Both the position numbers and the translations under genes were made by a program. Positions 3,101-64,000 of a stretch of DNA of 64,000 nucleotides are shown here, in pieces. The stretch lies in assembly GCF_963853765.1 (NCBI RefSeq), contig NC_088858.1, positions 6,696,001 through 6,760,000 on the forward strand. Reading direction: 5' to 3'. Within the stretch, counting starts at the first letter, position 1. Each line of letters opens with the position of its first letter. A model generated the notes under the pieces. The model did no database searches, was not told the origin of the DNA, and saw nothing but the letters and a program-made list of their open reading frames with translations. This DNA comes from Magallana gigas. Lineage: Eukaryota.

Positions 3101-6100
3101 GGTTTTCTCGGGGTGTCAATTTCAACTGTTACCCTCCCAAACAGGCACTATTTATATAATATCATATCATACAATATTGTATAATATGATATTGGTTTAT
3201 AACATATATATTTATATCACATGAAATTGTATAATATGATATTGTTATATATAATATTGTATCATATGATACAATATGTATAATATAATATTGTATTATT
3301 TAATATTTAACTAAATCACATGATATTGTATCATGTGATCTAATATCATATTTGATCAAATATGATACAATACAATATCATACTATATTATACAATGTGA
3401 TATCATGATGTACAATATTGTGATGTTTTGTGTGAGATGATATTGTATCATATAACACTATACAATGTCATATCATGTGTTACAATATCACATCTCATCA
3501 TTATTTATTATCATATTTTATTGTTTTATTTGATATACATTGTAAGTATGATAGGATGCAATATTGTATTTTATATTATTGTATTAATAAACATTGTATC
3601 TTACAATACTGTATGAAATGAACATAATTATGATTATCATACATTTTTATAACAGATGATATACAATATTGTGTCAAAACATATCCATGAATATCCAAGA
3701 ACAAAATTATGATTTTTATATAATATGATAAAGTTGGTCTCATAAAGGTGATGCCTTATAAAGGTGATGCCTCGTCTGGGTGAGCTTTGTAATCTGTGAT
3801 TACCTATGTTTAATTAGCATGACGTTGATACAGGTGAAATACAGCTTGTTGATCTGGTCTCTGTTATTGTCGTCAGGCATCTAACAGTCACATCAGTGGA
3901 CGGACAGGTGCTTGTCTGGCGGAGATTGCTGGTCTGTTGACTCGAGTGTTGACAGAGCTAGAGTGCATGATTGTACAGGTGCTGAGTGCACTAAGGTCAA
4001 GACAGGAACAGCTGGAGAAGAGGCTACTCAGATCCAGACAGAGGGACAACCTTATGCGGCTCATCAGAGGGTACAGTTATAACATATGTGTACAAGACTC
4101 ATCAGGGGGTACAGTTATAACATATGTGTACAAGACTCATCAGGGGGTACAGTTATAACATATGTGTACAAGACTCATCAGGTGGTACAGTTATAACATA
4201 TATGTACAAGACTCATTAGGGGGTACAGTTATAACATATGTTTCCAACAGGTTGTACAAATATTACGTACAGTACAGCTTTTACATTACACGTTACTCAG
4301 AGGTTACAACTATTACATATACATATCNNNNNNNNNNNNNNNNNNNNNNNNNNNNNNNNNNNNNNNNNNNNNNNNNNNNNNNNNNNNNNNNNNNNNNNNN
4401 NNNNNNNNNNNNNNNNNNNNNNNNNNNNNNNNNNNNNNNNNNNNNNNNNNNNNNNNNNNNNNNNNNNNNNNNNNNNNNNNNNNNNNNNNNNNNNNNNNNN
4501 NNNNNNNNNNNNNNNNNNNNTATTGAAATTCAGGGGACCATGCAAATTATTTCAATATATCCGTATTTCAATATAAGCGAAATTGACTGATGTGAAGCCG
4601 CCATTTTTGAAAGTTCAATCCCGATGTAAGCATAGAAAACCAAACCCGAACAAATTATTAGATCATCATTTATCTATTACAATAAACGGATTACATGGAA
4701 CATTAGTCTTTGAAAGTTTGATTAAAATTATATCCGAAAGTTTTGTAAGTTTCGTTTTGTTACTATCTTAAACCTCATCATAATCTCGGATCGCATTCCT
4801 TTACGTTTTAGAAAAACGTTAGAGAAAAATCACCACATTCAAACGCTTCAAATATTGCTGAACGCTGCTTGTATATCATCGTCAGTGTACACGCGATAAT
4901 CTCAAAATCCTTAGCTATTTCGAATTTAGGCTTTGTTCTTTCATCAACAGCCATAACTTGTTTGTATTTAGCGTCCGGAGATAAGGTCTTTATTTTCCGT
5001 GGGGTTTCCATATTACGTCTAGCCTCAATACATCCGTATTCGTAAAAACAAAAAATTAAACAGTGAATAAATTTTACTTTTTGATAAAAGTATAAAAACA
5101 CACATGAAGAGAACTTATCAATTCACACCTTTGTATATCAACCGGTCAGTCTGGCACAATTACTGTCACCAACCGTGACGACAGCCGCCAGGGAGAACTT
5201 CAATATAACCGTTATAAAAACAACTAATTATCACCTTTGGGGACCGACCAGTGGCTTCAATATAAGCGATATTTCAAAATAACCGATTTCATTATATCCG
5301 TGAAATCAATGCAAAGAATATGAGAGGTAAAAACTGGGGATTTATTTCTATTTCAAAATAAGCGGAATTTCAAAATAAGCGAGNNNNNNNNNNNNNNNNN
5401 NNNNNNNNNNNNNNNNNNNNNNNNNNNNNNNNNNNNNNNNNNNNNNNNNNNNNNNNNNNNNNNNNNNNNNNNNNNNNNNNNNNNNNNNNNNNNNNNNNNN
5501 NNNNNNNNNNNNNNNNNNNNNNNNNNTGTAAGTCTATTATGTAAGTCTTAGACCTACATAAAGATTTTAAAATACCAACTCATGAGATATTTACATTTAC
5601 ATTAGACCCCCGCTCTGCAGCAGACCTTTAGAAATCAATCTATTAATTCATCTGTCTGTTCTGTTTATCCACCTGTCCATCCAGTATCATGTACCTGAAG
5701 TATAGGATCTCTTTCCTTGACCCAGTCTTAGTCTTTCCAATACATGTACTTTATCCAAGATTGCTCATATGTCAAGTGTGTTCAGTGAACTTGATTCAAC
5801 TTTCTAGTTTAACGGTCAAATTCAAAGCAGATACCCGAGTAAAAATTCTTGTCTGGAGCATATTTTCTCTTCCTTTTACCCCAAATCAACCCAAAAAGTG
5901 CTGTTTCAGTTAGTTAAGGATGTGCAGTAACTTGAACCAAACATTCTTGCTCAAAATGTCAAAGAACTGCGAACGCTAACGCCCGTTTCCCGCCTACATT
6001 TTACATCCAAATATTTCGGAATTTCTGTCAGATATTCAAAAACTAAGTTTTCAACTAAAAAGTATTATCAAATCCTAATCAATTTATATAAAAGTAAAAT

Positions 6101-45767: not shown

Positions 45768-48700
45768 TCAGTGAAATAGTTCTTTGTTGATGAGTACTCC
45801 GGACTGGCCCTCGGTTAAGCGACAGTCGTACTCTATCCAGGATAGAGCGTTGCCCCATCGACTGTGATCGGTCTCTGGCTGGGGGTAGAACTTACACTGG
45901 AGTAACGTTGTCAGTGTTACCTCCCCGTCAAACTACAGGAAAATATCATAAACATAACGGAATCATAAACAACTTCACGTCAGATAAAAGGAAACCTATT
46001 TCTATAGATATAATAAAATTTAATTTTACACAAGGAAGGGATTTCTTCAAGGTAATTCTACCGACACATTAACAAAAAACCATTTTTATTTTTATAATGA
46101 TCAGGAAACACGCTTTTCAGGGCTTGTTGTATTGATCAAGGAAATTGTCCAAGAAAAAGAGGTCTAAAAGTGTAAGCATGTGATTGCGGCTGAAGATGTT
46201 TTTTTTTTCAATAGCAGGACTATACATTTTTTCAAAGGGGAAAACTATTTAGTTGGGTATAGCTAGAAAGATAAAATTAAAACCAATGGAAATAAACAGC
46301 AATTAATATTGTCACATCATTCGGATATAATGACCCAGACATTTCGATCTTAACAATTCACAAAAAATTCTCTTATTGACACATTTAGATATTTCTCAGG
46401 CCGGTCCTTATTAGAAGGGATTATTTCGGTGTTTACAGTTATGACAAATGACTTGAGTGTTTAGTGTCAGATTTAGCCGTAACTTTAGATGTTGTACACC
46501 AAAATGAACATGAATTAATGCACCAATGTACATGATTGTATGAATGTAAATATTAATTCAAATAAGTAAATTTTGATAATCTTAATATATTCACCATAAG
46601 AACAACCGTGACATTTTTTCGGTTATTTCTTTTCTCCACGGCAAACCCCGATGTGTTGAAAACGGCAGAGAACCGGAAGTTATCATCTGATTTCTTGCCC
46701 GTTTCCGGTCTCACTTCCTTCAGCTCATACTTTTCTCCTTGAATCATTAAATCTCTGCAAGTGTCAACATTTAAATTCGTTAGATTTTTGGGTTTTAAAT
46801 GAATGTTTTATTGTTTTGTTTTATTTAATCTGTTTTAAAGGTATAAATTTCTAAATACGCTATGCAATCAAAACCCCTCGATAACTAGGGGGATTTGTCT
46901 ACATTGTTACAAGTACACCTGCAGGCTTGTTCACGAAACTTTCCTAAGATGTGACCTAAGTGTGTTCCTAAGATATGACTTAGGAAAAAAGTTAGGAACA
47001 TCCTAAGATCAACTTAGGACACGTCCTAAGATGTAGCTCGACGGTTACTTAGGAACATCTTAAGTTACTTCTACATCCATTAATATTTTTCACAATTATT
47101 CATTCAGATCGAATTTGAGAGACTTGTGTAGGGATGAATCATTAAACATTTTGCCAGAGAAAATTGTACGTCTCGGTAGTTAACACAAAAGGCCTAAAAC
47201 CAGTAATTTTAATGTATGCATTTTAATAATTTTACATTTACCTAAATATATATCAGTTACCAATAACAATTTAGTTTGTCCCCCCCCCCCCCAAAAAAAA
47301 ATTAAAATAAAAAATATTACAAGCCCCAAAAAATAGCTGTTCTTTTTAAAAAAAAAAAAAGAAGAAATATTTATCAGGACATAATTGGCTTACAAGCAGA
47401 TAATTATGTAAACAAGACGTGTGTATTGTCATTTCATAATTAACATTTGAGAATATTATCATTCAAGTATATGGAATACATAAACACGTGGTTTTCATAG
47501 AATTTGAAACATTATATGAAGAAACAAATGTACTCGTACAAACACAACCAATTTCCCTTTAATCTGCAATATATAGAATACACGAACATGTTAAATAAGA
47601 AATAAGTTGTAATATATTTCGAAAATATATACCGGTAAATACAGTTCATTCAACATTACAAATGTTTTAAAGATTATTGTGATAAAAATTAGGAATGATC
47701 ACGCATTGTATGTGCAACCCGATGTAAATTTACTTTTTATAGCAAAGGACATTTAAATAATTGTTATCAAAAATTATCATAATCAAAACAATGAATGTAA
47801 CTCATTTAGTGTACAATGTAGATTAAAAAAAATAAGTGAATAACTTTCATTCGTCAAACAGAGAAAGTATTTGCAAAAAAAAATCTTAATTTGTCAGCTC
47901 CAAGGCAGGCATGTAGCAACGGGGAAGTGGTGAGAGTTCGATGCCCCCCCCCCCCTCCCGGATAAGAAATTTGATGTTTGTCGAAAATGCTGGAACTGTG
48001 GAAAATATTGCCTTATTCTACCGGTCTTAAGAAAAGGCTTCACAAGATCCCAATATCCCTAAAAACGTGATTTTATAGCTTTAGGATGGTCTTAGGACAA
48101 GGTAGGTGATGTCTTAAAGTTAGGACAAAGTTATGGCGGTTCCTAAATTTAGGAGAGCTTCGAGAAACAGACTTAAGACTAGGACATGTCCTAAGATGTA
48201 CTTAGGACACACCATAGTCCTAAGACAGCTTCGTGAACATGCCTGCTGGTGTAGATGATTTACACTTTATAACAAGCGCAATTTGGTGTAGTGTACATTT
48301 TTAATATGAACGCCAAAGAAATGAAGGCTGCTGAGGAGTTCCGTTTTTAAGGCAATTTTTTCATTTTAAAAGTCTTTAAAAATACATAATTTTTGTAATC
48401 CATTGTGGCAATTATGTATTGTCAGTTTTCAGGTACATGCAAAATACAGTATGTTTTTGCTTCTTTGGGCTTAGGAACTTTATTTAGGAGAGATACAAGC
48501 AAAAATAAATAAATAAAGTGAATTTACTTACTTTACAACTGAATAGTTTAACCAAAATTGCTAGAGAGCTAGTGCATTCATATGCATTGATAAATAAATG
48601 TGTTATAACGCTGTAGAACTTGGACAATTGTTCAATATTTTGTTAACATATTTTTCTCGTGTCTCTGAATGTACACATCATATGTTATCATTTTCTTTAT

Positions 48701-49902
48701 TGGAAAAGACATACGTTTTATAGCTGTTATAATGATAAACAATACAGAAAAAAATACAGGCAAAAGTGGATGGTTATCGAGGTAATGTGNNNNNNNNNNN
48801 NNNNNNNNNNNNNNNNNNNNNNNNNNNNNNNNNNNNNNNNNNNNNNNNNNNNNNNNNNNNNNNNNNNNNNNNNNNNNNNNNNNNNNNNNNNNNNNNNNNN
48901 NNNNNNNNNNNNNNNNNNNNNNNNNNNNNNNNNNNNNNNNNNNNNNNNAGTGGAGGGGGCAGACTCATCCAAAAAATATAACTTCAATTTCAGTGTTCAT
49001 TTTTTTTATTTATTAAACTTCAATTTTTCACTTGGTATAAAAAAAGGGGACCGTAACTCCTTGATAATTCACCTTTAATGTATGAAAAATCTTTTCTGCG
49101 ACACAGGAAGGGGGGGGGGGCAGACCCTCCTGGCCTCTCTGATGCTACGTCTCACTCTCTCTCTCTCTCTCTCTCTCTCAATTCTATATTTTTTTCCTGC
49201 AAAAATCGTTCAAAATCAAATTAAATTTGCCCATTTGATCACTTCTTCCATTACTATATTTTATTATCAGAATCTCGAGAGTCAAGTCAGATCGTAAATT
49301 CGTGTACCAGTCAGTGCTTGTAAAAGTAAACATTTCAATGTGATCAAACAATGATGAGGCGTGGATCTATTCTTGGGTGCTAATGAAATACTTTTGAGTT
49401 AACTGTATTAGATTATCATTTGTATCAACCAGGACAATCAAATTCCAATTATCGGTTTAAAGCACAATTGACAGCCTACTAAGAGAATAATCCACATGAG
49501 TCGGCAATTTTATCAGTTGCTACCATCGCGAAGCTCACGTTAAGGATTTTTTCATGTTTCTAATTTATTTTTTACTTAATTGCTGAATAATCTCAATGTG
49601 ATCAGGGTTGGCGGGTCCATGCGTCGTTATCTTTTAAGCATGCTACATTTATCTAGGCAGACTCTTACATATACACCTGTCGGAGCAATATTTTCTATGT
49701 ATGGCGAGTAAGCGAGGGTACGATGTTCACCTGAGACTTACCTGAGAAGGAGAGGAGACTGTACGGTGATTATGTAGTCCGTATCCTGGTTCAGTTTGAG
49801 GGTGTGAGGGTGGTCGAACCTCTCCCCGTCATGTTTATAACACACCCCGCCCCCGCCCTCCTTTTGCCGGAGGAAGAGGAGAACCTTTAACTGAGAGGAC
49901 AT
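45768..49902 (-). CDS. CNRIP1: CB1 cannabinoid receptor-interacting protein 1 (CRIP1a) orthologue; 161 aa
   Basis: Exons 49902-49742, 46754-46595, 45932-45768 (486 nt, GT-AG, phases 2 and 0). Translation: MSSQLKVLLFLRQKEGGGGVCYKHDGERFDHPHTLKLNQDTDYIITVQSPLLLRDLMIQGEKYELKEVRPETGKKSDDNFRFSAVFNTSGFAVEKRNNRKNVTVVLMFDGEVTLTTLLQCKFYPQPETDHSRWGNALSWIEYDCRLTEGQSGVLINKELFH. Family motifs recognised: YK.DG.RF, T.KL, Q.KFY, H..WG, IEY.C, NKE.F. Confidence 0.92.
46922..48245. mobile_element. Non-autonomous TIR DNA transposon (1324 bp) with a 3-bp TSD, in CNRIP1 intron 1
   Basis: TIR CAGGCTTGTTCACGAA / TTCGTGAACATGCCTG. TSD CTG at 46919-21 and 48246-48. Dense subterminal TCCTAAG/CTTAGGA motifs at both ends. 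The superfamily (PIF/Harbinger or Academ type) is uncertain. Confidence 0.85.
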
Positions 49903-51933: not shown

Positions 51934-53114
51934 TAAAAAAAATTATTGGGGCAATTTTCATTAAAAAAAATCATTGCATACATCTTCAAGGAATGTTGAG
52001 ACATAAACTCAAGATTTAGTAGTCCAAATTAGTTCATATATATAAATACATGTATTAATTGTTTTTACAACACGTAATAAAATGGCGTTCACATAGACTA
52101 GGCCAAATGTTTAAGTGAGAGAGAGAGATGGTGCAAGCGCCTAAAGATGCACAAACATTAATTAAAAACCCTGTTTTTGATCTCCTAAAAGAAAAAAAGC
52201 CAAATTAATATGTAAGTTTTTATTCAAAGTAGAAAAAAATGCAGAATGAAAAGTAGAATAGTAAACAAACATGCAGACTTTGAGACTAAATAAAAGCTCC
52301 GAACAACATCTGGTACATGTAATTTAATCACAGCATCCTGTACAACTTAACAAAATCATTTTAATGCAGGTTACATTTGTATGACAACCATACATAAATA
52401 GCTGTAGTATTTGTATTAAAAAAAATGAAGAAAAAAAACTTCATACATGTCCAAGAATTTCCTTTGGTGTATCTCTCTCACCATGATACCTAAATCATAC
52501 AATATTTCTAAAGTTCTAAACCCTCAATAATCACAGTAAGGTTTTGCTTGGTTTAAATTTAAAAAAAGTTATTGCATATTTTATATACAGTCTTGAATCC
52601 TCTTACTTGCATAAACAAACATGATTTTCAGGACCCATAAGTGACACAGCCCATCGTTATAGATTTACAGTACAGATAGTCATGCATTCTTGAGCAAAGT
52701 GTAAACAAACAAACTACAACAAACCTTAACAACATTCAATCAGGAGAGATAACTCTGGACTCCAGTTTTATTTTAAACATCAATAAATACTGGAACATTT
52801 CACTTAGCAACACACTGTAAGGTTTACGGTATATTTTGAGGAGTTTTTAGAGATAATTGCACATCATCATCAATAACATATAACCTTGTTTACGAACACA
52901 GACAAAAGATCTGAAAAAAAGTTATTACGGTAAAAAGATCACATACAATATATTTTACTTCTGGAATGATAGTACTAGTATGCATAGATAACAAAATAAT
53001 CCTTTACTACCTACATGTGCATAAGCTTGCATGAATAACCAAAATTTTTCCTTGAAAAACATGAGATCAAGAAACATGTAAATAAAATAACAAATTGATC
53101 CTGAGTTTTCCCAA

Positions 53115-56100
53115 CTATTCAGCTTCACCTTGAAGCACAGAATATTCTACATTGTACTTTTTTTTCTCTCTTTGTCCACGTCGTGCAAAAGAAAAGGTAA
53201 CCACCATCACAGCTAACAAGCTCAGAAACAGAAAGAGCCACCAAAATACAGAGCTAGGCCAGGCAGAGTTCCGATAATTCACATCAGAGTGGACGTCAAT
53301 GCCCCATACGTCGTCCAGCAGACTGAAGGCCTTGTTTGAGTCGTGTCCAATCCCCCCTACAACGTACAATTCATTCCACGTATGAAAAGATATGGCATCA
53401 GTGCGGCAGCTTGGGTATTTCCCGTTCTCAAACTCGTTGTTCGCTGAACCATAACTTCCAGGGTCACTACCCATGTTGGTGCCACCCATCCATGACCACA
53501 TCTTATAGTCCAGATCAAAATACCACAGGTCATTCAAAATAACATCTGGTAACTCACTGGAGATGGATTTGGATTCTGATGATGCTCCCTCTCCCCCAAA
53601 CATCCACAGATGCCCCTCGCTATCAGTCCAACTGATGGCTCCTCTCCGGCATCCTGGAATACTCTTCTTATTCGCCTTTCCTTTCTGTCCATAATAACCA
53701 GGTAAACATTTGCTCTCTCCCATTAATTTTTCCCATGTGTTTTTCTTACAATTGAAATTCCATAAATCGGTTGAAAACCCAGAGTTATGATGAGAATCAA
53801 TCTTATTCTCATTTTGGCTATTTCCAGCAAACAAATAAAGCTGTTCATTATGCCCTACCCATGCTGCTGCCCCACTACGGCCGCCCGGATAAGAAATGCT
53901 GGGAGGAATTATGCCCTCACGGTGAAGTTCTGCTGATAGTTTTTCCTGTCGCCAAGTAAGATCAACCAAACTATACTCCCACATATCATCCAAAAGAGCA
54001 GAATTTTCTGATATTCCTCCATAAATCATCATCTTTGTCTGCATACACCACAACACAGCATCTGCTCTGGGATTAGGAGAGTCAACCACAGATTCATTCC
54101 GAAGTTTTTTCAACATTTCTGCGAGAGGAAGCCATTTCTTTTCTTTAAATGTGAAGATCCAGGTGTCTCCAAACACTTGCTTGTCTTTATTCATTCCCCC
54201 AAACAGCACAATCAGCACATTGGGCACCCCGCACATTGATGCCAACCTCCTTGCAGCAGGTACCCTTTGATCTTTGGAAGACACATCTGACTTTTCAGAT
54301 CCAGGATGTTCAAGAGTCCACTCTCTCTTTATTACATTATATTTCCAAAGGTCATTCTTCAGAGCTGATTTTCCATTGTAAATTCCTTGTCCCCCAAACA
54401 CCCACGTATTAAACACATCCTCCTGCCAGAATGCACCCCCTCCTCGTGAGCCAATGGAGTTCTGGGTTGATTCCTGATTTCCATGACTGTTTCCATATGA
54501 CCATCTAAAGCGTACACCTGTAATATATTAAAACTGTATAAAAATGCAAGCTCCACAATAAATTTTAAGTACCGGTATAAGTGTTTACTGCATTATCATT
54601 GGTTTACCATAACTAGCACTCACAACAAGTGGACAGTTAGGCTATCTTTAAAAATAAATTTTGTTTGAAATTGCCGCATGGGGGTTTCTAGACCCGAGAG
54701 AGAGGGAATTTTTTTAAAAATACATAACTGCATATATAAAAGAGTTCTTTATTTTTTGCTAATAAAATCTTATCAGCGGGGAATACATGTATTTCAATGA
54801 GGCAAGCAAACAATAATTTTATTTTGGCCTTAGATGCTTGAAATGGCATCAAGAGACTTTGTACCCAATATGAGTTGAGTTGAACATATTTTATTGACTA
54901 ATGCCTAATATGAGTACAAATTCTTAGTTTTGTTAGTTTTCTTCAATAGTAATTGTTGGTAGCTTTGTAATTTATATTCATTTGAATTTATTATATTACT
55001 TTAAAAAATCAATTTTCCAAAATCTGATTTAAAAATGTTCTTTAAATAAAATGTTTCACATATTTTAGACTCAAGATTATTCAGGGCAGTAATCTCAAAT
55101 GACAAGTTGTTGGAAATTATGAGAGAAGGGTGAAAGAAGATTTAAACTAAATTACCAATCAAAATCAAACAGTAAGTAATTACAGGTAACTTAAAAAAAA
55201 AAAATGGGTTGTGGGGTGTGTGAATGGGGGGAGTTATTACAAAATCATAAATTTTTCTCCTTGTGTGAAATTTGTCGTAAAGATATATTGTATAGGCTAA
55301 CATACCCTTTCACAGTAACTGCAGTCTTCTTTCTTGCAGGCAAAATGAGATCATTTAGTGAAATATGTAATACGCATATCATTATTTGCTTATTCTATGT
55401 CATTTAATTCTCTACTTCTTAAACTTCCCAAAATTAATCAATTAGCTCTGCAAAAAAGCAGTATTGCATGCAGTTACTGTGAAAGGGTCTCTTTATACAT
55501 TGTATCTTAGATATTGACTGAAATGAGTGAAGGTTAATGACTTTAAAGGGACTATATACATCAAAAGACTTTTAGCGCACATGGTGATGTACATATAATC
55601 CAAAGTTTTTCTATACTACAGCACTCATTAAGTGTAAAAATGTGGAGTACAGTGATTTTTCTCTGTTTTTAAAAGGGACCTGTGGCTTTTAAATTGGAAT
55701 TCAAATTAAATTGTCAGTTAGAAAAATTTTACTAATAGACCCCTTCACGATAATTGCGGTACTGCTATCTTGCAGGGCAAAATGATATACTTTGCCGAAA
55801 TTTCAGTAGGAAGATAATTAAATGACGTAAATGAAACAATTGATGTTACGTCATATTTCACCAAATTATGTCATTTTGCCCTGCAAAAGAGCAGTACCGC
55901 AGTTACCGTGAAGGGGTTAATAAATGTAGATAAACTATCCAGTAAATTAAAATGATTTGTTTTAATTTTATCTGTTGTATATTGTATTATCATCAATCAT
56001 TTCTTGTGCTGCTCATTTAAATGAACTTTAGGAATACAAAATCCATTTTTTTTTCTTGGCATTAAAAATTAAGGCAGCAAAGTGCAGGTTCAATTGAGAA

Positions 56101-56918
56101 AACCTGTATTAATTGCAAGGGGAAAGTGACAAATTTTAGACCTAAATATCACTGTCAAGACAGCACTTAGATTAGGGAAATAACAGCTAAAGGTAGTTAG
56201 CTAATGGATTTCCTTTTAAAATGGTATAGGCCATAGGCGCTCCCCAGCTAATTTTGTAAATGACAAACGGCATCAGATCTATTTATATATGTCTACCCTC
56301 TATACAATTTTATAGTATGCATGAATAGATATCGTTCGTCATTTACAAAATTAGCTGGGGAGCGTCTATGGTATAGGCTATATAACCATGGGAACAGTAG
56401 ATGTGTCCAGTGAATGTTGTTGTTATTTTTTGTTTGTTTTTTTTTTACTGGAAATGAGTTTTTGAAGTTAATTTAAAAAAATAAATTAATGATACAAACG
56501 ACATTATTATTACTGTAAGAGTCTTGTGCTTATATTTTTAATAAAATAACACCCCACTTCAACTAAAAAATTCATTTTGAGAGAGTTAACAAGAGAGATT
56601 TTATTTATACATGTAACCTGGTAACGACCGTAAAAATATTACTTCTGTTCCCTAACTGTCAAAGAATCTAACGTGAAAGTTTCGTCAACCACAGAAAAAG
56701 TAAAACTGCTCTCACTGTCAATAACAGCGTCTGCACGAAGGACGGCAACTCAAAGCACAGAAAAAACCCCAGAAAAATAGATTGCAAAATTTCTCTGATA
56801 AGTTGAAATTTAACAAAAAAGAGGTGATAAAATATACTTAAGTAAAGGTAATTTAGATTGACTTACCGCTTATTTGAGGGGCTATCAGAATCACAAGACA
56901 TGAGCAAATAAATTGCAT
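53115..56918 (-). CDS. Kelch-repeat (beta-propeller) type I membrane protein; 484 aa
   Basis: Exon 1 (56918-56867) encodes the signal-peptide-like MQFICSCLVILIAPQIS with donor G|GTAAGT. Exon 2 (54517-53115) joins in phase 1. About six kelch blades (WVFGG..NDLWKY, VLFGG..GDTWIF, MIYGG..DDMWEY, YLFAG..TDLWNF, WMFGG..NDLWYF, YVVGG..DDVWGI), then TM VFWWLFLFLSLLAVMVVTFSFA and tail RRGQREKKKYNVEYSVLQGEAE. Confidence 0.88.
55304..55917. mobile_element. Two neighbouring copies of a MITE of about 180 bp (55304-55488 and 55739-55917)
   Basis: Both carry the TIR ACCC(T/C)TTCAC(A/G)..AA(C/T)TGC(A/G)GT / its complement GTTAC(T/C)GTGAA(A/G)GGGT, with similar inner GCAAAATGA motifs. Confidence 0.75.
56231..56371. 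mobile_element. 141-bp MITE/hairpin
   Basis: Arms CCATAGGCGCTCCCCAGCTAATTTTGTAAATGAC / GTCATTTACAAAATTAGCTGGGGAGCGTCTATGG (34 bp, 1 mismatch). Confidence 0.8.
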
Positions 56919-57449
56919 TTTTGTACATGCATTTACGATACCCACGGGTGTACCCATTGCGAAATAGGACTTTCAATCCTGGTCAGATCGACGCTTAACC
57001 AAATCGGCACGAAGAATGGGACACTTTCACAAGTAATAGCTTGCACGTCGCTAAAATTCTGACTTCTTCACACTTAGCTAAAACTGTGATTTTCACACCC
57101 GAGTGAGCACTGAGACCCTATAATCCGTTTTAGGTGTGAACTACATGTATAATAATTTTGTTAGATATTCTTGACAATATGGAAAAATTAAAATTTTTAA
57201 AACACACGTGTCTTTAACCACATTGACAATGAACAATATAATAGTGATACCACAAGGAACCGCAATGAATAATGAACCACAGTAATACTTCAATAAACTT
57301 TATTAAGGTGATAATGTCAAAAAATATAACTACAGTTTCAGCATTTAAGAACAGCCTCAAAAATATTATTAGTAAAAAACTGAATATGCATAAAATTTAT
57401 TTAACCATGACAAAAGATTAGAAAATATTTGGCATTGTCATTTGAGAAA

Positions 57450-63325: not shown

Positions 63326-63577
<252 letters not shown>

Positions 63578-64000
63578 TAGTGTCAAGAATGTTAAAGGAG
63601 TCTGATAAATGTTTACTTTTTACACCTCAACTTAACGTGCATACGCCCATTACTGCAGATTATGACAAGTTTGTTTCATTTTGATTTGTTAGGTATTTAT
63701 TTGATTAATGATTTAAAACCTGCGTTTATGCACAATGGTTGTAAATAATTATTTTGTTTCAATCATTTTTTCCAGTGCAAACAATGTCAGAATTGTAGAG
63801 GCAAATTTGATTTTTTCAAAAGAAGAAAGGTGTGTATTATTATTTTTTAGAAATATTTTTATAACATTTACTTCTATGTCATTAATAGAATAGTTTTTTT
63901 CATATGTCAAGAAACATAAAGTAATATTATCCGGATGGATAGGTGCTATAATGAAAACACATTTTCATAAAATTAGTTTAGTGTTCATTTGATCAACCTT

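What the first reader, a model, noticed from the sequence alone, without database searches (positions are those of the whole stretch)
53115..56918. Kelch-only cell-surface protein with bacterial-style blades and a YxxL sorting tail
The hidden signal-peptide exon turns an apparent cytosolic kelch ORF into a type I membrane protein: signal peptide, one propeller, TM, and a 22-aa tail ending YSVL (an AP mu-subunit-type motif). Known animal extracellular kelch proteins (attractin, MEGF8) have many additional domains. Blades such as PGCRRGAISWTDSEGHLWMFGGEG and WSWMGG resemble repeats I associate with bacterial secreted kelch proteins, and the whole propeller is one exon. It is a candidate uncharacterised lectin/cargo receptor, possibly of horizontal origin (inference).
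Basis: partly seen in the sequence, partly recalled or inferred. Interest (0 to 1): 0.7.

Follow-up and report, generated by a model that had tools for sequence, protein, structure and literature searches.

The report
Ancient kelch-propeller surface receptor gene
This oyster gene is real, expressed and already annotated; it encodes a membrane protein with one outward-facing kelch propeller and a short tail carrying a conserved tyrosine motif, it is shared by corals and molluscs, and it is not a recent gift from bacteria.

Summary
A minus-strand two-exon gene encodes signal peptide, six-blade kelch propeller, one transmembrane helix and a 23-residue tail containing YSVL. An RNA contig and two raw reads show the 56867/54517 junction.

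Corrections:
- The start is probably 39 nt further upstream, at 56957. This gives 497 aa, identical to a RefSeq protein of Magallana gigas / Crassostrea angulata.
- YSVL is followed by five more residues, so the tail does not end there.

The blades do resemble bacterial repeats. Outside animals, all named hits are bacterial, and the similarity is strongest over blades 5-6.

Recent horizontal origin is not supported. Bivalves, gastropods and stony corals carry the same architecture and the same phase-1 intron before the propeller. They share three invariant cysteines, a conserved N-glycosylation site and an invariant tail tyrosine. Several also keep the same neighbours: ZFYVE21 head-to-head and CNRIP1 downstream. 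In a quick tree the animal proteins form one group apart from bacteria.

The gene is therefore at least as old as the cnidarian-bilaterian ancestor. A still older bacterial origin stays open.

Most likely it is a cycling surface/endosomal receptor. An ITIM-like signalling tail is the main rival. The ligand is unknown, and I found no paper on the family.

The parts
56867..56957 (-). Exon 1: start codon (56957; alternative ATG at 56918) and the hydrophobic signal-peptide region. It ends in phase 1 at a GTAAGT donor.
   Evidence: Sequence read. Translation is identical to RefSeq P0292. It is spliced to exon 2 in RNA contig X11 and in X21 reads. A homologous signal-peptide exon exists in Babylonia, Potamilus and Acropora.
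54518..56866 (-). Intron (2349 nt, GT..AG, phase 1) containing dispersed repeats.
   Evidence: Joint 'skips 2349'. Splice sites. Repeat-like depth spikes in both orientations at 54641-54954, 55740-55920 and 56211-56367.
53115..54517 (-). Exon 2: the whole propeller, transmembrane helix, tail and stop codon.
   Evidence: Covered end to end by RNA contigs of runs X11 and X13.
53289..54517 (-). Six-blade kelch beta-propeller ectodomain (residues about 31-440), closed by the N-terminal strand.
   Evidence: Pfam kelch families, best 1.1e-38. AF2 model pLDDT 80.4. LZTR1 kelch Z 36.0, rmsd 2.4 A over 305 residues; KLHDC3 Z 35.8.
53301..53786 (-). Blades 5-6 (about residues 275-436), the long-loop 'bacterial-style' blades with W-x-W, YG, PGCRR and FGGEG motifs.
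   Evidence: The best-scoring domains of the non-family proteins listed (top 70 rows) nearly all map to model positions about 264-425. Coordinates are converted approximately from model positions.
54090..54098 (-). N-glycosylation sequon N171-E-S, the only sequon in the protein.
   Evidence: On my reading of the alignment, a sequon stands at this aligned place in at least 20 of 24 family members, corals included.
53187..53249 (-). Transmembrane helix (about V454-F474).
   Evidence: Hydropathy maximum 2.49 over 19 residues. Helix in the AF2 model. Basic residues follow it.
53118..53186 (-). Cytoplasmic tail (A475-E497).
   Evidence: Translation. Aligned tails.
53133..53144 (-). YSVL (Y489-L492), a tyrosine-based motif.
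   Evidence: Tyr is invariant in 23 of 23 tails. L, I or V stands at +3 in every tail of the printed alignment.
52943..53114 (-). 3' UTR (RNA contigs end at 53033, 52950 or 52943).
   Evidence: table 8.
63461..63577 (+). First coding exon of the head-to-head neighbour ZFYVE21. This is context, not part of the gene.
   Evidence: tblastn 61% identity, E 5e-12 and 5e-11, to the first exons of genes called with FYVE + ZFYVE21_C in Babylonia and Acropora. Pfam itself finds nothing in this short exon.
49759..49890 (-). An exon of the downstream neighbour CNRIP1 (context).
   Evidence: Pfam PF15043 at 2.7e-09, 37.2 bits against a cut-off of 27. tblastn to the coral CNRIP1 neighbours.

Best explanation
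The gene encodes a single-pass type I membrane glycoprotein. A signal peptide on its own small exon takes the chain into the ER. A six-blade kelch propeller faces the lumen or outside; it is probably disulfide-bonded and N-glycosylated. One helix spans the membrane. A 23-residue cytoplasmic tail carries a tyrosine motif, (V/I)-x-Y-x-x-(L/I/V), about 15 residues from the membrane.

The gene is single-copy in oysters as far as the searches show, and it belongs to an old animal family shared by molluscs and stony corals.

The most likely mode of action is a receptor that binds a still unknown ligand with its propeller. It would be taken up or sorted between the surface, the trans-Golgi network and endosomes when clathrin adaptors bind the tyrosine motif, as for the YSVL motif of sortilin.

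Shown: gene model, splicing, fold, domain content, cross-phylum conservation, intron position and gene neighbours. Inferred: signal-peptide cleavage, glycosylation, disulfides, adaptor binding, and any ligand.
For: - Gene model and splicing.
- Domain content and fold: only kelch domains; six-blade fold.
- Extracellular topology:
  - an N-terminal hydrophobic exon in every full-length orthologue;
  - one sequon conserved in place in at least 20 of 24 members;
  - Cys126, Cys188 and Cys320 invariant in 24 of 24;
  - basic residues after the membrane helix.
- Tail motif: Tyr489 is invariant in 23 of 23 tails and L, I or V stands at +3 in the printed alignment, from corals to oysters.
- Precedent: sortilin's Y14-S-V-L17 is described as a canonical AP-1/AP-2-binding motif that is important for its endocytosis (PMC6965034).
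- Age and orthology:
  - the same phase-1 intron in oyster, Babylonia, Potamilus and Acropora;
  - ZFYVE21 head-to-head in the oyster window and in four other loci;
  - CNRIP1 downstream in oyster, two coral loci and one further bivalve-like contig;
  - animals form one group in the tree, SH-aLRT 100.
- Purifying selection: 5 of 7 coding variants seen in RNA contigs are synonymous.
Against: - No signal-peptide or topology predictor was available. The residues at -3/-1 before the exon boundary in M. gigas are not a textbook cleavage site, so the N-terminus could be an uncleaved anchor.
- YxxPhi is a short motif. The conserved V/I at -2 also fits an ITIM.
- No ligand, location or adaptor binding has been tested.
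- The conserved propeller residues are mostly structural, so nothing points to a binding site.
- One RNA contig keeps the start of the intron.
Confidence: 0.55

Rival explanations
1. The tail tyrosine is a phosphotyrosine docking site of ITIM type, (I/V/L/S)-x-Y-x-x-(I/V/L). The protein would then be a signalling, inhibitory receptor that recruits SH2-domain phosphatases rather than a cycling cargo receptor.
For: V or I stands at -2 in 19 of 23 tails, including all corals and all oysters, by my count from the alignment. A plain YxxPhi signal does not require this. Coral tails are conserved over about 20 residues around the tyrosine, which suggests a more specific partner.
Against: Four members have G, A or T at -2. 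The ITIM consensus is as loose as YxxPhi, and the two roles are not exclusive. No kinase or phosphatase evidence exists.
Confidence: 0.2
2. The gene entered animals from bacteria by horizontal transfer. In its strong form this happened recently, in oysters or molluscs. In its weak form it happened before the cnidarian-bilaterian split, with later gain of the signal-peptide exon, the membrane helix and the tail.
For: - After the animal family, every named hit is bacterial, at 24-31% identity.
- Single-propeller bacterial proteins score higher against the oyster protein (217 bits) than the coral orthologue does (139 bits).
- Solved eukaryotic kelch proteins score far lower, best 30 bits.
- The propeller lies on one exon in every species examined.
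Against: - The strong form is contradicted by orthologues in corals and molluscs that share intron, neighbours and derived residues.
- In the tree, animals form one group that does not nest within the sampled bacteria.
- GC3 of 0.42 is not unusual here.
- The weak form could not be tested. The hit lists are capped and filled by repetitive bacterial proteins, so other eukaryotic relatives may simply be unseen. Consensus-like bacterial repeats also inflate scores.
Confidence: 0.12
3. It is a membrane-anchored enzyme, such as a NanM-like sialic-acid mutarotase or a galactose-oxidase-like oxidase, rather than a receptor.
For: Many bacterial relatives are auto-named N-acetylneuraminic acid mutarotase. 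YjhT/NanM is a good structural match, Z 31.3.
Against: The Pfam NANM score of 34.7 is below its cut-off of 45. Galactose oxidase matches much worse, Z 19.8, and from general knowledge it has seven blades. The bacterial names are automatic COG labels.
Confidence: 0.06
4. It is an ordinary cytosolic kelch adaptor, as the RefSeq name 'kelch domain-containing protein 4' suggests, and the N-terminal exon and hydrophobic C-terminus have no topological meaning.
For: The automatic RefSeq name. The best fold matches are cytosolic ubiquitin-ligase adaptors.
Against: The hydrophobic N-terminus, the membrane helix, the conserved sequon and the invariant cysteines are kept across two phyla. No BTB, BACK or other adaptor domain is present.
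Confidence: 0.03

Closest known systems
Attractin / MEGF8 (animal type I membrane proteins with an extracellular kelch propeller)
   Same: Signal peptide, an outward-facing kelch propeller, a single membrane helix and a cytoplasmic tail. Pfam's ATRN/LZTR1 propeller family is hit at 1.4e-24.
   Different: From general knowledge, these are very large proteins with CUB, EGF, PSI, C-type lectin and laminin-EGF domains. Here Pfam finds nothing but kelch.
Sortilin / Vps10p-domain sorting receptors
   Same: One beta-propeller ectodomain, one membrane helix and a short tail. The same four residues, YSVL, lie about 14-15 positions from the membrane. In sortilin this is a functional AP-1/AP-2 motif (PMC6965034). 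This is the best model for how the protein may work.
   Different: There is no homology: sortilin has a ten-blade Vps10 propeller plus the 10CC module. The tail here lacks the acidic-cluster dileucine motif of sortilin.
Bacterial secreted long-loop kelch proteins (Acidobacteriota, Bacteroidota T9SS cargo and others, auto-named 'N-acetylneuraminic acid mutarotase')
   Same: The same blade pattern: W-x-W, a loop with YG, PG-x-R, FGG-x-G, NDLW. Identity is 24-31% over most of the propeller, strongest over blades 5-6.
   Different: They often have many repeats and T9SS or other C-terminal domains. They lack the eukaryotic membrane-helix-plus-tail arrangement. In the one bacterial example I read, the invariant animal Cys in PGCR is Ala (P0006). 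They fall on the other side of a 100%-supported branch.
LZTR1, KLHDC2/3/10 kelch domains
   Same: The closest solved folds: six-blade kelch, Z 36.0 and 35.8, rmsd 2.4-2.7 A over 305-314 residues.
   Different: These are cytosolic ubiquitin-ligase substrate adaptors without a signal peptide or membrane helix. Sequence identity is about 19-22%. The RefSeq names that borrow from them ('KLHDC4', 'LZTR1 homolog') are misleading.
NanM / YjhT (periplasmic N-acetylneuraminate mutarotase)
   Same: An extracytoplasmic six-blade kelch propeller, Z 31.3.
   Different: The Pfam NANM score is below its cut-off, 34.7 against 45. Catalytic residues were not examined.

Membership tests
Kelch-repeat beta-propeller superfamily | Significant matches to kelch repeat or propeller profiles | tested here: met
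   PF24681 at 1.1e-38 (133 bits, cut-off 50); PF24981, PF13418, PF13415, PF01344 and PF07646 all above their cut-offs.
Kelch-repeat beta-propeller superfamily | Closed propeller of four-stranded blades | tested here: met
   The AF2 model has six blades, the last completed by the N-terminal strand. LZTR1 Z 36.0, KLHDC3 Z 35.8.
Attractin / MEGF8 | CUB, EGF, PSI, C-type lectin and laminin-EGF domains beside the kelch propeller | tested here: not met
   Pfam at E up to 0.1 lists only kelch families and a sub-threshold DUF4381 hit (E 0.0055, 17.5 bits against a cut-off of 27.2).
LZTR1 (name given to the coral orthologue) | Two BTB-BACK domains after the kelch domain; cytosolic | tested here: not met
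   No BTB or BACK hit in the oyster protein. The coral protein has a hydrophobic N-terminus, a membrane helix and a tail instead.
KLHDC4 (name given by RefSeq to the M. gigas protein) | Orthology to vertebrate KLHDC4, a soluble kelch protein | not tested
   No KLHDC4 sequence was at hand. The signal-peptide exon and membrane helix do not fit a soluble protein, but that comparison rests on general knowledge.
NanM (N-acetylneuraminate epimerase) | Score above the Pfam NANM gathering threshold | tested here: not met
   34.7 bits against a cut-off of 45.
Galactose oxidase / AA5 | Seven-blade propeller with copper ligands and flanking domains | tested here: not met
   The model has six blades. Galactose oxidase matches at only Z 19.8, rmsd 4.3 A. 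Copper ligands were not examined.
Type I receptors sorted by a YxxPhi signal (functional class, e.g. sortilin) | Y-x-x-(bulky hydrophobic) in a short cytoplasmic tail, conserved among orthologues | tested here: met
   Tyr in 23 of 23 tails; L, I or V at +3 in the printed alignment.
Type I receptors sorted by a YxxPhi signal (functional class, e.g. sortilin) | Binding to AP mu subunits and motif-dependent internalisation | not testable with these tools
   Needs pull-down or uptake assays.
ITIM-bearing receptors | (I/V/L/S)-x-Y-x-x-(I/V/L) in the tail | tested here: inconclusive
   Met in 19 of 23 tails; four have G, A or T at -2. Phosphorylation is not testable here.
Horizontally acquired bacterial gene (recent) | Restricted to one animal lineage, nested within a bacterial clade, no shared introns or synteny with other animals | tested here: not met
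   Present in bivalves, gastropods and corals. Shared phase-1 intron. Shared ZFYVE21 and CNRIP1 neighbours. Animals and bacteria are separated by one branch, SH-aLRT 100.

The most novel reading that the evidence does not exclude
A bacterial long-loop kelch gene was captured before cnidarians and bilaterians split. It was turned into a surface receptor by gaining a signal-peptide exon, a membrane helix and a tyrosine-motif tail. It has since been kept head-to-head with the endosomal FYVE protein gene ZFYVE21, about 270 bp apart in corals, since the cnidarian-bilaterian ancestor, as one co-regulated endocytic module.
Probability: 0.1. Interest if true: 0.7.

Novelty: new variant of a known kind. 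Interest (0 to 1): 0.42.

Why it matters
Single-pass receptors with a propeller ectodomain and a tyrosine sorting signal are well known (sortilin, the LDL-receptor family). Extracellular kelch propellers in animals are known from the large multidomain attractin and MEGF8.

A minimal receptor made of nothing but one kelch propeller does not seem to have been described. It is conserved from corals to oysters and carries automatic names that hide its nature.

It is a tractable candidate for an unknown ligand-uptake or recognition pathway in marine invertebrates. The lasting pairing with ZFYVE21 gives a concrete hypothesis to test.

It also shows that 'best hits are bacterial' is not enough to call a horizontal transfer.

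Tried and rejected
- No SignalP or DeepTMHMM was available. Topology rests on hydropathy and cross-species conservation.
- The exhaustive HMM search returned a top-150 list filled by long multi-repeat bacterial proteins. It added six family members but could not show or exclude distant eukaryotic relatives.
- The look-up of encoding contigs had no record for the Montipora protein P0328. Acropora and an ENA coral contig were used instead.
- Three Pfam calls failed because a tblastn-derived CNRIP1 stretch contained a stop. The ZFYVE21 first exon gives no Pfam hit, so its identity rests on similarity to exons of genes called ZFYVE21 elsewhere.
- Literature searches by accession, by architecture words and by phrases such as 'extracellular kelch' found nothing on this family.
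- NanM, galactose oxidase, LZTR1, KLHDC and attractin membership were considered and rejected or left open (see the membership tests).
- No paralogue is present in the window.
Full report
**What is in the sequence**

On the minus strand an ORF listed from 53115 to 54416 stays open upstream to an AG acceptor, so exon 2 begins at 54517. About 2.3 kb further upstream, a short exon ends at a GCG|GTAAGT donor, with its last base at 56867. Joining 56867 to 54517 keeps the frame; the intron is phase 1.

A second in-frame ATG lies at 56957. The 497-residue product from that ATG is identical to P0292, a RefSeq protein recorded for Magallana gigas ('kelch domain-containing protein 4') and for Crassostrea angulata ('uncharacterized protein LOC128176481').

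The window is therefore Pacific/Portuguese oyster DNA, and the two-exon model is already in RefSeq. The MG(T/N) start is shared by the Crassostrea virginica and Ostrea edulis orthologues, and C. virginica has no second Met. I therefore prefer 56957 as the start. The one spliced RNA contig stops at 56947 next to adapter sequence, so 56918 is not excluded.

**Is it spliced and expressed?**

Yes. A 1589-nt transcriptome contig of run X11 (depth 104) covers 53033-54515 and continues at 56865-56947. The joint skips 2349 bases with CT..AC ends on the plus strand, which is GT..AG on the minus strand, and the cut fits equally two places further on. Two raw poly(A) RNA reads of run X21 show the same joint.

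A contig of run X13 runs unspliced from 52943 to 54903 and breaks in an intronic repeat, so some intron-containing RNA exists too. Of seven coding differences seen in the RNA contigs, five are synonymous.

**What the protein is**

Pfam finds only kelch families. The best is PF24681 at 1.1e-38; the NanM family stays below its cut-off. An AlphaFold2 model built on seven mollusc sequences has mean pLDDT 80.4 and pTM 0.79. It shows six four-stranded blades, the last completed by the N-terminal strand, then one long helix.

The nearest solved folds are six-blade kelch domains:

| Structure | Z | rmsd / aligned residues |
|---|---|---|
| LZTR1 | 36.0 | 2.4 A over 305 |
| KLHDC3 | 35.8 | 2.7 A over 314 |
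| KLHDC2 | 32.0 | 3.1 A over 301 |
| NanM/YjhT | 31.3 | 2.3 A over 290 |
| Galactose oxidase | 19.8 | 4.3 A over 307 |

The strongest hydrophobic stretch is residues about 454-474. It is followed by RRGQREKKK and a 23-residue tail, in which YSVL (489-492) is followed by QGEAE.

**Relatives**

Close relatives come from other oysters. Named cluster members identify C. virginica (78% identity to the oyster protein), Saccostrea echinata (74%) and Ostrea edulis (71%). At 31-33% identity there are Mactra, Mya and the gastropod Babylonia.

The exhaustive profile search added Nucella, the freshwater mussels Potamilus and Sinanodonta, and four unnamed members. A protein of the coral Montipora, named 'LZTR1 homolog' by RefSeq, matches over 94% of the oyster protein at 26% identity. 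It has the same layout. Using it as a query recovers a family across stony corals, Acropora included.

After the animal proteins, both the oyster and the coral queries drop straight to bacterial and metagenomic proteins at 24-31% identity. Named ones are from Acidobacteriota, Bacteroidota, Nitrospiria and others, and many carry T9SS sorting domains.

The best-scoring domains of the non-family proteins listed map almost entirely to model positions about 264-425, which is blades 5 and 6. Solved eukaryotic kelch proteins match mainly blades 1-4, and much more weakly.

**Why this is not a recent horizontal transfer**

Five lines of evidence agree.

1. *Architecture.* Every full-length member, coral or mollusc, has a hydrophobic N-terminus, one propeller, one membrane helix and a short tail.
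2. *Intron.* Oyster, Babylonia, Potamilus and Acropora each have a phase-1 intron in the codon just before the first propeller strand. Everything downstream lies on one exon.
3. *Neighbours.*
   - In Acropora the gene lies between ZFYVE21 (head-to-head, about 260 bp between the called genes) and CNRIP1.
   - A second coral contig has both neighbours.
   - Babylonia and the locus of P0250 have ZFYVE21 head-to-head.
   - The contig of P0246 has CNRIP1 downstream.
   - In the oyster window, CNRIP1 lies downstream at 45774-49890 (Pfam PF15043, 2.7e-09). A ZFYVE21 first exon lies at 63461-63577 on the opposite strand.
   - CNRIP1 is inverted in oyster relative to coral. Mactra has a different upstream gene. 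The block is therefore conserved but not rigid.
4. *Derived residues.* In a 24-sequence alignment Cys126, Cys188, Cys320, the GHD triplet at 421-423 and the tail Tyr489 are invariant or nearly so. On my reading of the alignment, an N-glycosylation sequon sits at the same place in at least 20 of 24 sequences. In the bacterial protein I read, the PGCR cysteine is alanine in every repeat.
5. *Tree.* In a quick maximum-likelihood tree of 24 animal and 26 bacterial or presumed bacterial (metagenomic) proteins, animals and bacteria are split by one branch (SH-aLRT 100). Molluscs (98) and corals (100) are each one group. The animal genes do not nest inside the sampled bacteria.

The gene was therefore present in the common ancestor of cnidarians and bilaterians. 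Whether that ancestor, or an earlier one, obtained it from bacteria cannot be decided here. The hit lists are capped and dominated by repetitive bacterial proteins, and I could not survey other eukaryotes.

**How it most likely works**

The separate signal-peptide exon, the conserved sequon, the three invariant cysteines and the basic residues after the helix all point to a propeller that faces the ER lumen and then the outside. This topology is inferred from conservation, not measured.

The tail tyrosine is invariant in 23 of 23 tails, and L, I or V stands at +3 in every tail of the printed alignment. That is the YxxPhi pattern read by the mu subunits of clathrin adaptors. Sortilin is also one propeller plus a short tail, and it uses the very same residues, Y14-S-V-L17, as a canonical AP-1/AP-2-binding motif important for its endocytosis (PMC6965034).

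I therefore favour a receptor that cycles between the surface and endosomes and binds an unknown ligand on its propeller. The main rival is an ITIM-like phosphotyrosine signal. V or I stands at -2 in 19 of 23 tails, and coral tails are conserved over about 20 residues, more than a bare sorting signal needs. The two roles are not exclusive.

An enzymatic role (NanM-like or oxidase-like) and a cytosolic adaptor role are unlikely.

**Comparison with what is known, and novelty**

The protein is a member of the kelch propeller superfamily. It is not a member of the attractin/MEGF8, LZTR1, NanM or galactose oxidase families. I could not test orthology to KLHDC4, but the architecture does not fit a soluble protein.

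In function it most resembles propeller-ectodomain sorting receptors. The gene is annotated, so the 'hidden exon' is not new. I found no paper on the family.

Extracellular kelch domains are thus not unique to this gene in oysters.

I rate it a new variant of a known kind, of moderate interest. The conserved pairing with ZFYVE21 is the most intriguing lead.

**Limits**

- No topology predictor was available.
- No N stretch lies in or near the gene. The N runs at 4328-4520, 5384-5526 and 48790-48948 were left untouched.

Noticed in passing
window 63461-63826 (+) and 45774-49890 (-); L001, L004, L005, L006: The kelch receptor gene sits head-to-head with ZFYVE21 in oyster, a gastropod, two coral loci and one unnamed mollusc-like locus. 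The gap is only about 270 bp in corals, which suggests a shared bidirectional promoter. CNRIP1 lies downstream in oyster, corals and one further contig. CNRIP1 is inverted in oyster relative to coral.
   Followed up: partly
window 54641-54954, 55740-55920, 56211-56367 (inside the intron): RNA depth here is up to about 10 times that of the exons, in both orientations, with many loose ends of differing sequence. These look like dispersed repeats transcribed from many copies elsewhere. A consistent loose end at 54905 (14 reads, agreement 0.99) marks one repeat boundary or an insertion polymorphism.
   Followed up: no
window 52943-54903 (-): A 1947-nt contig of run X13 runs from the 3' UTR through the acceptor into the intron without splicing. 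Intron-retaining or precursor RNA is therefore abundant enough to assemble in that run.
   Followed up: no
P0292 (oyster), P0328 (Montipora): The automatic RefSeq names 'kelch domain-containing protein 4' and 'leucine-zipper-like transcriptional regulator 1 homolog' are attached to proteins with a signal peptide, a membrane helix and no BTB domain. The names are misleading.
   Followed up: partly
L002:10998-12491 (Mactra antiquata): The Mactra gene model has two extra small exons that add about 27 residues found in no other member. This is probably an annotation artefact.
   Followed up: no
coral proteins P0328, P0342-P0360: Coral tails are about twice as long as mollusc tails and are almost invariant around the tyrosine (VVKYKPVKVEM, followed by a proline-rich stretch). 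Corals also have extra conserved cysteines just inside the membrane. This hints at palmitoylation or a specific cytoplasmic partner.
   Followed up: no
window 52961: A 14-base deletion in the 3' UTR relative to the window appears in the X13 contig. It is a length polymorphism or a difference between related oyster taxa.
   Followed up: no
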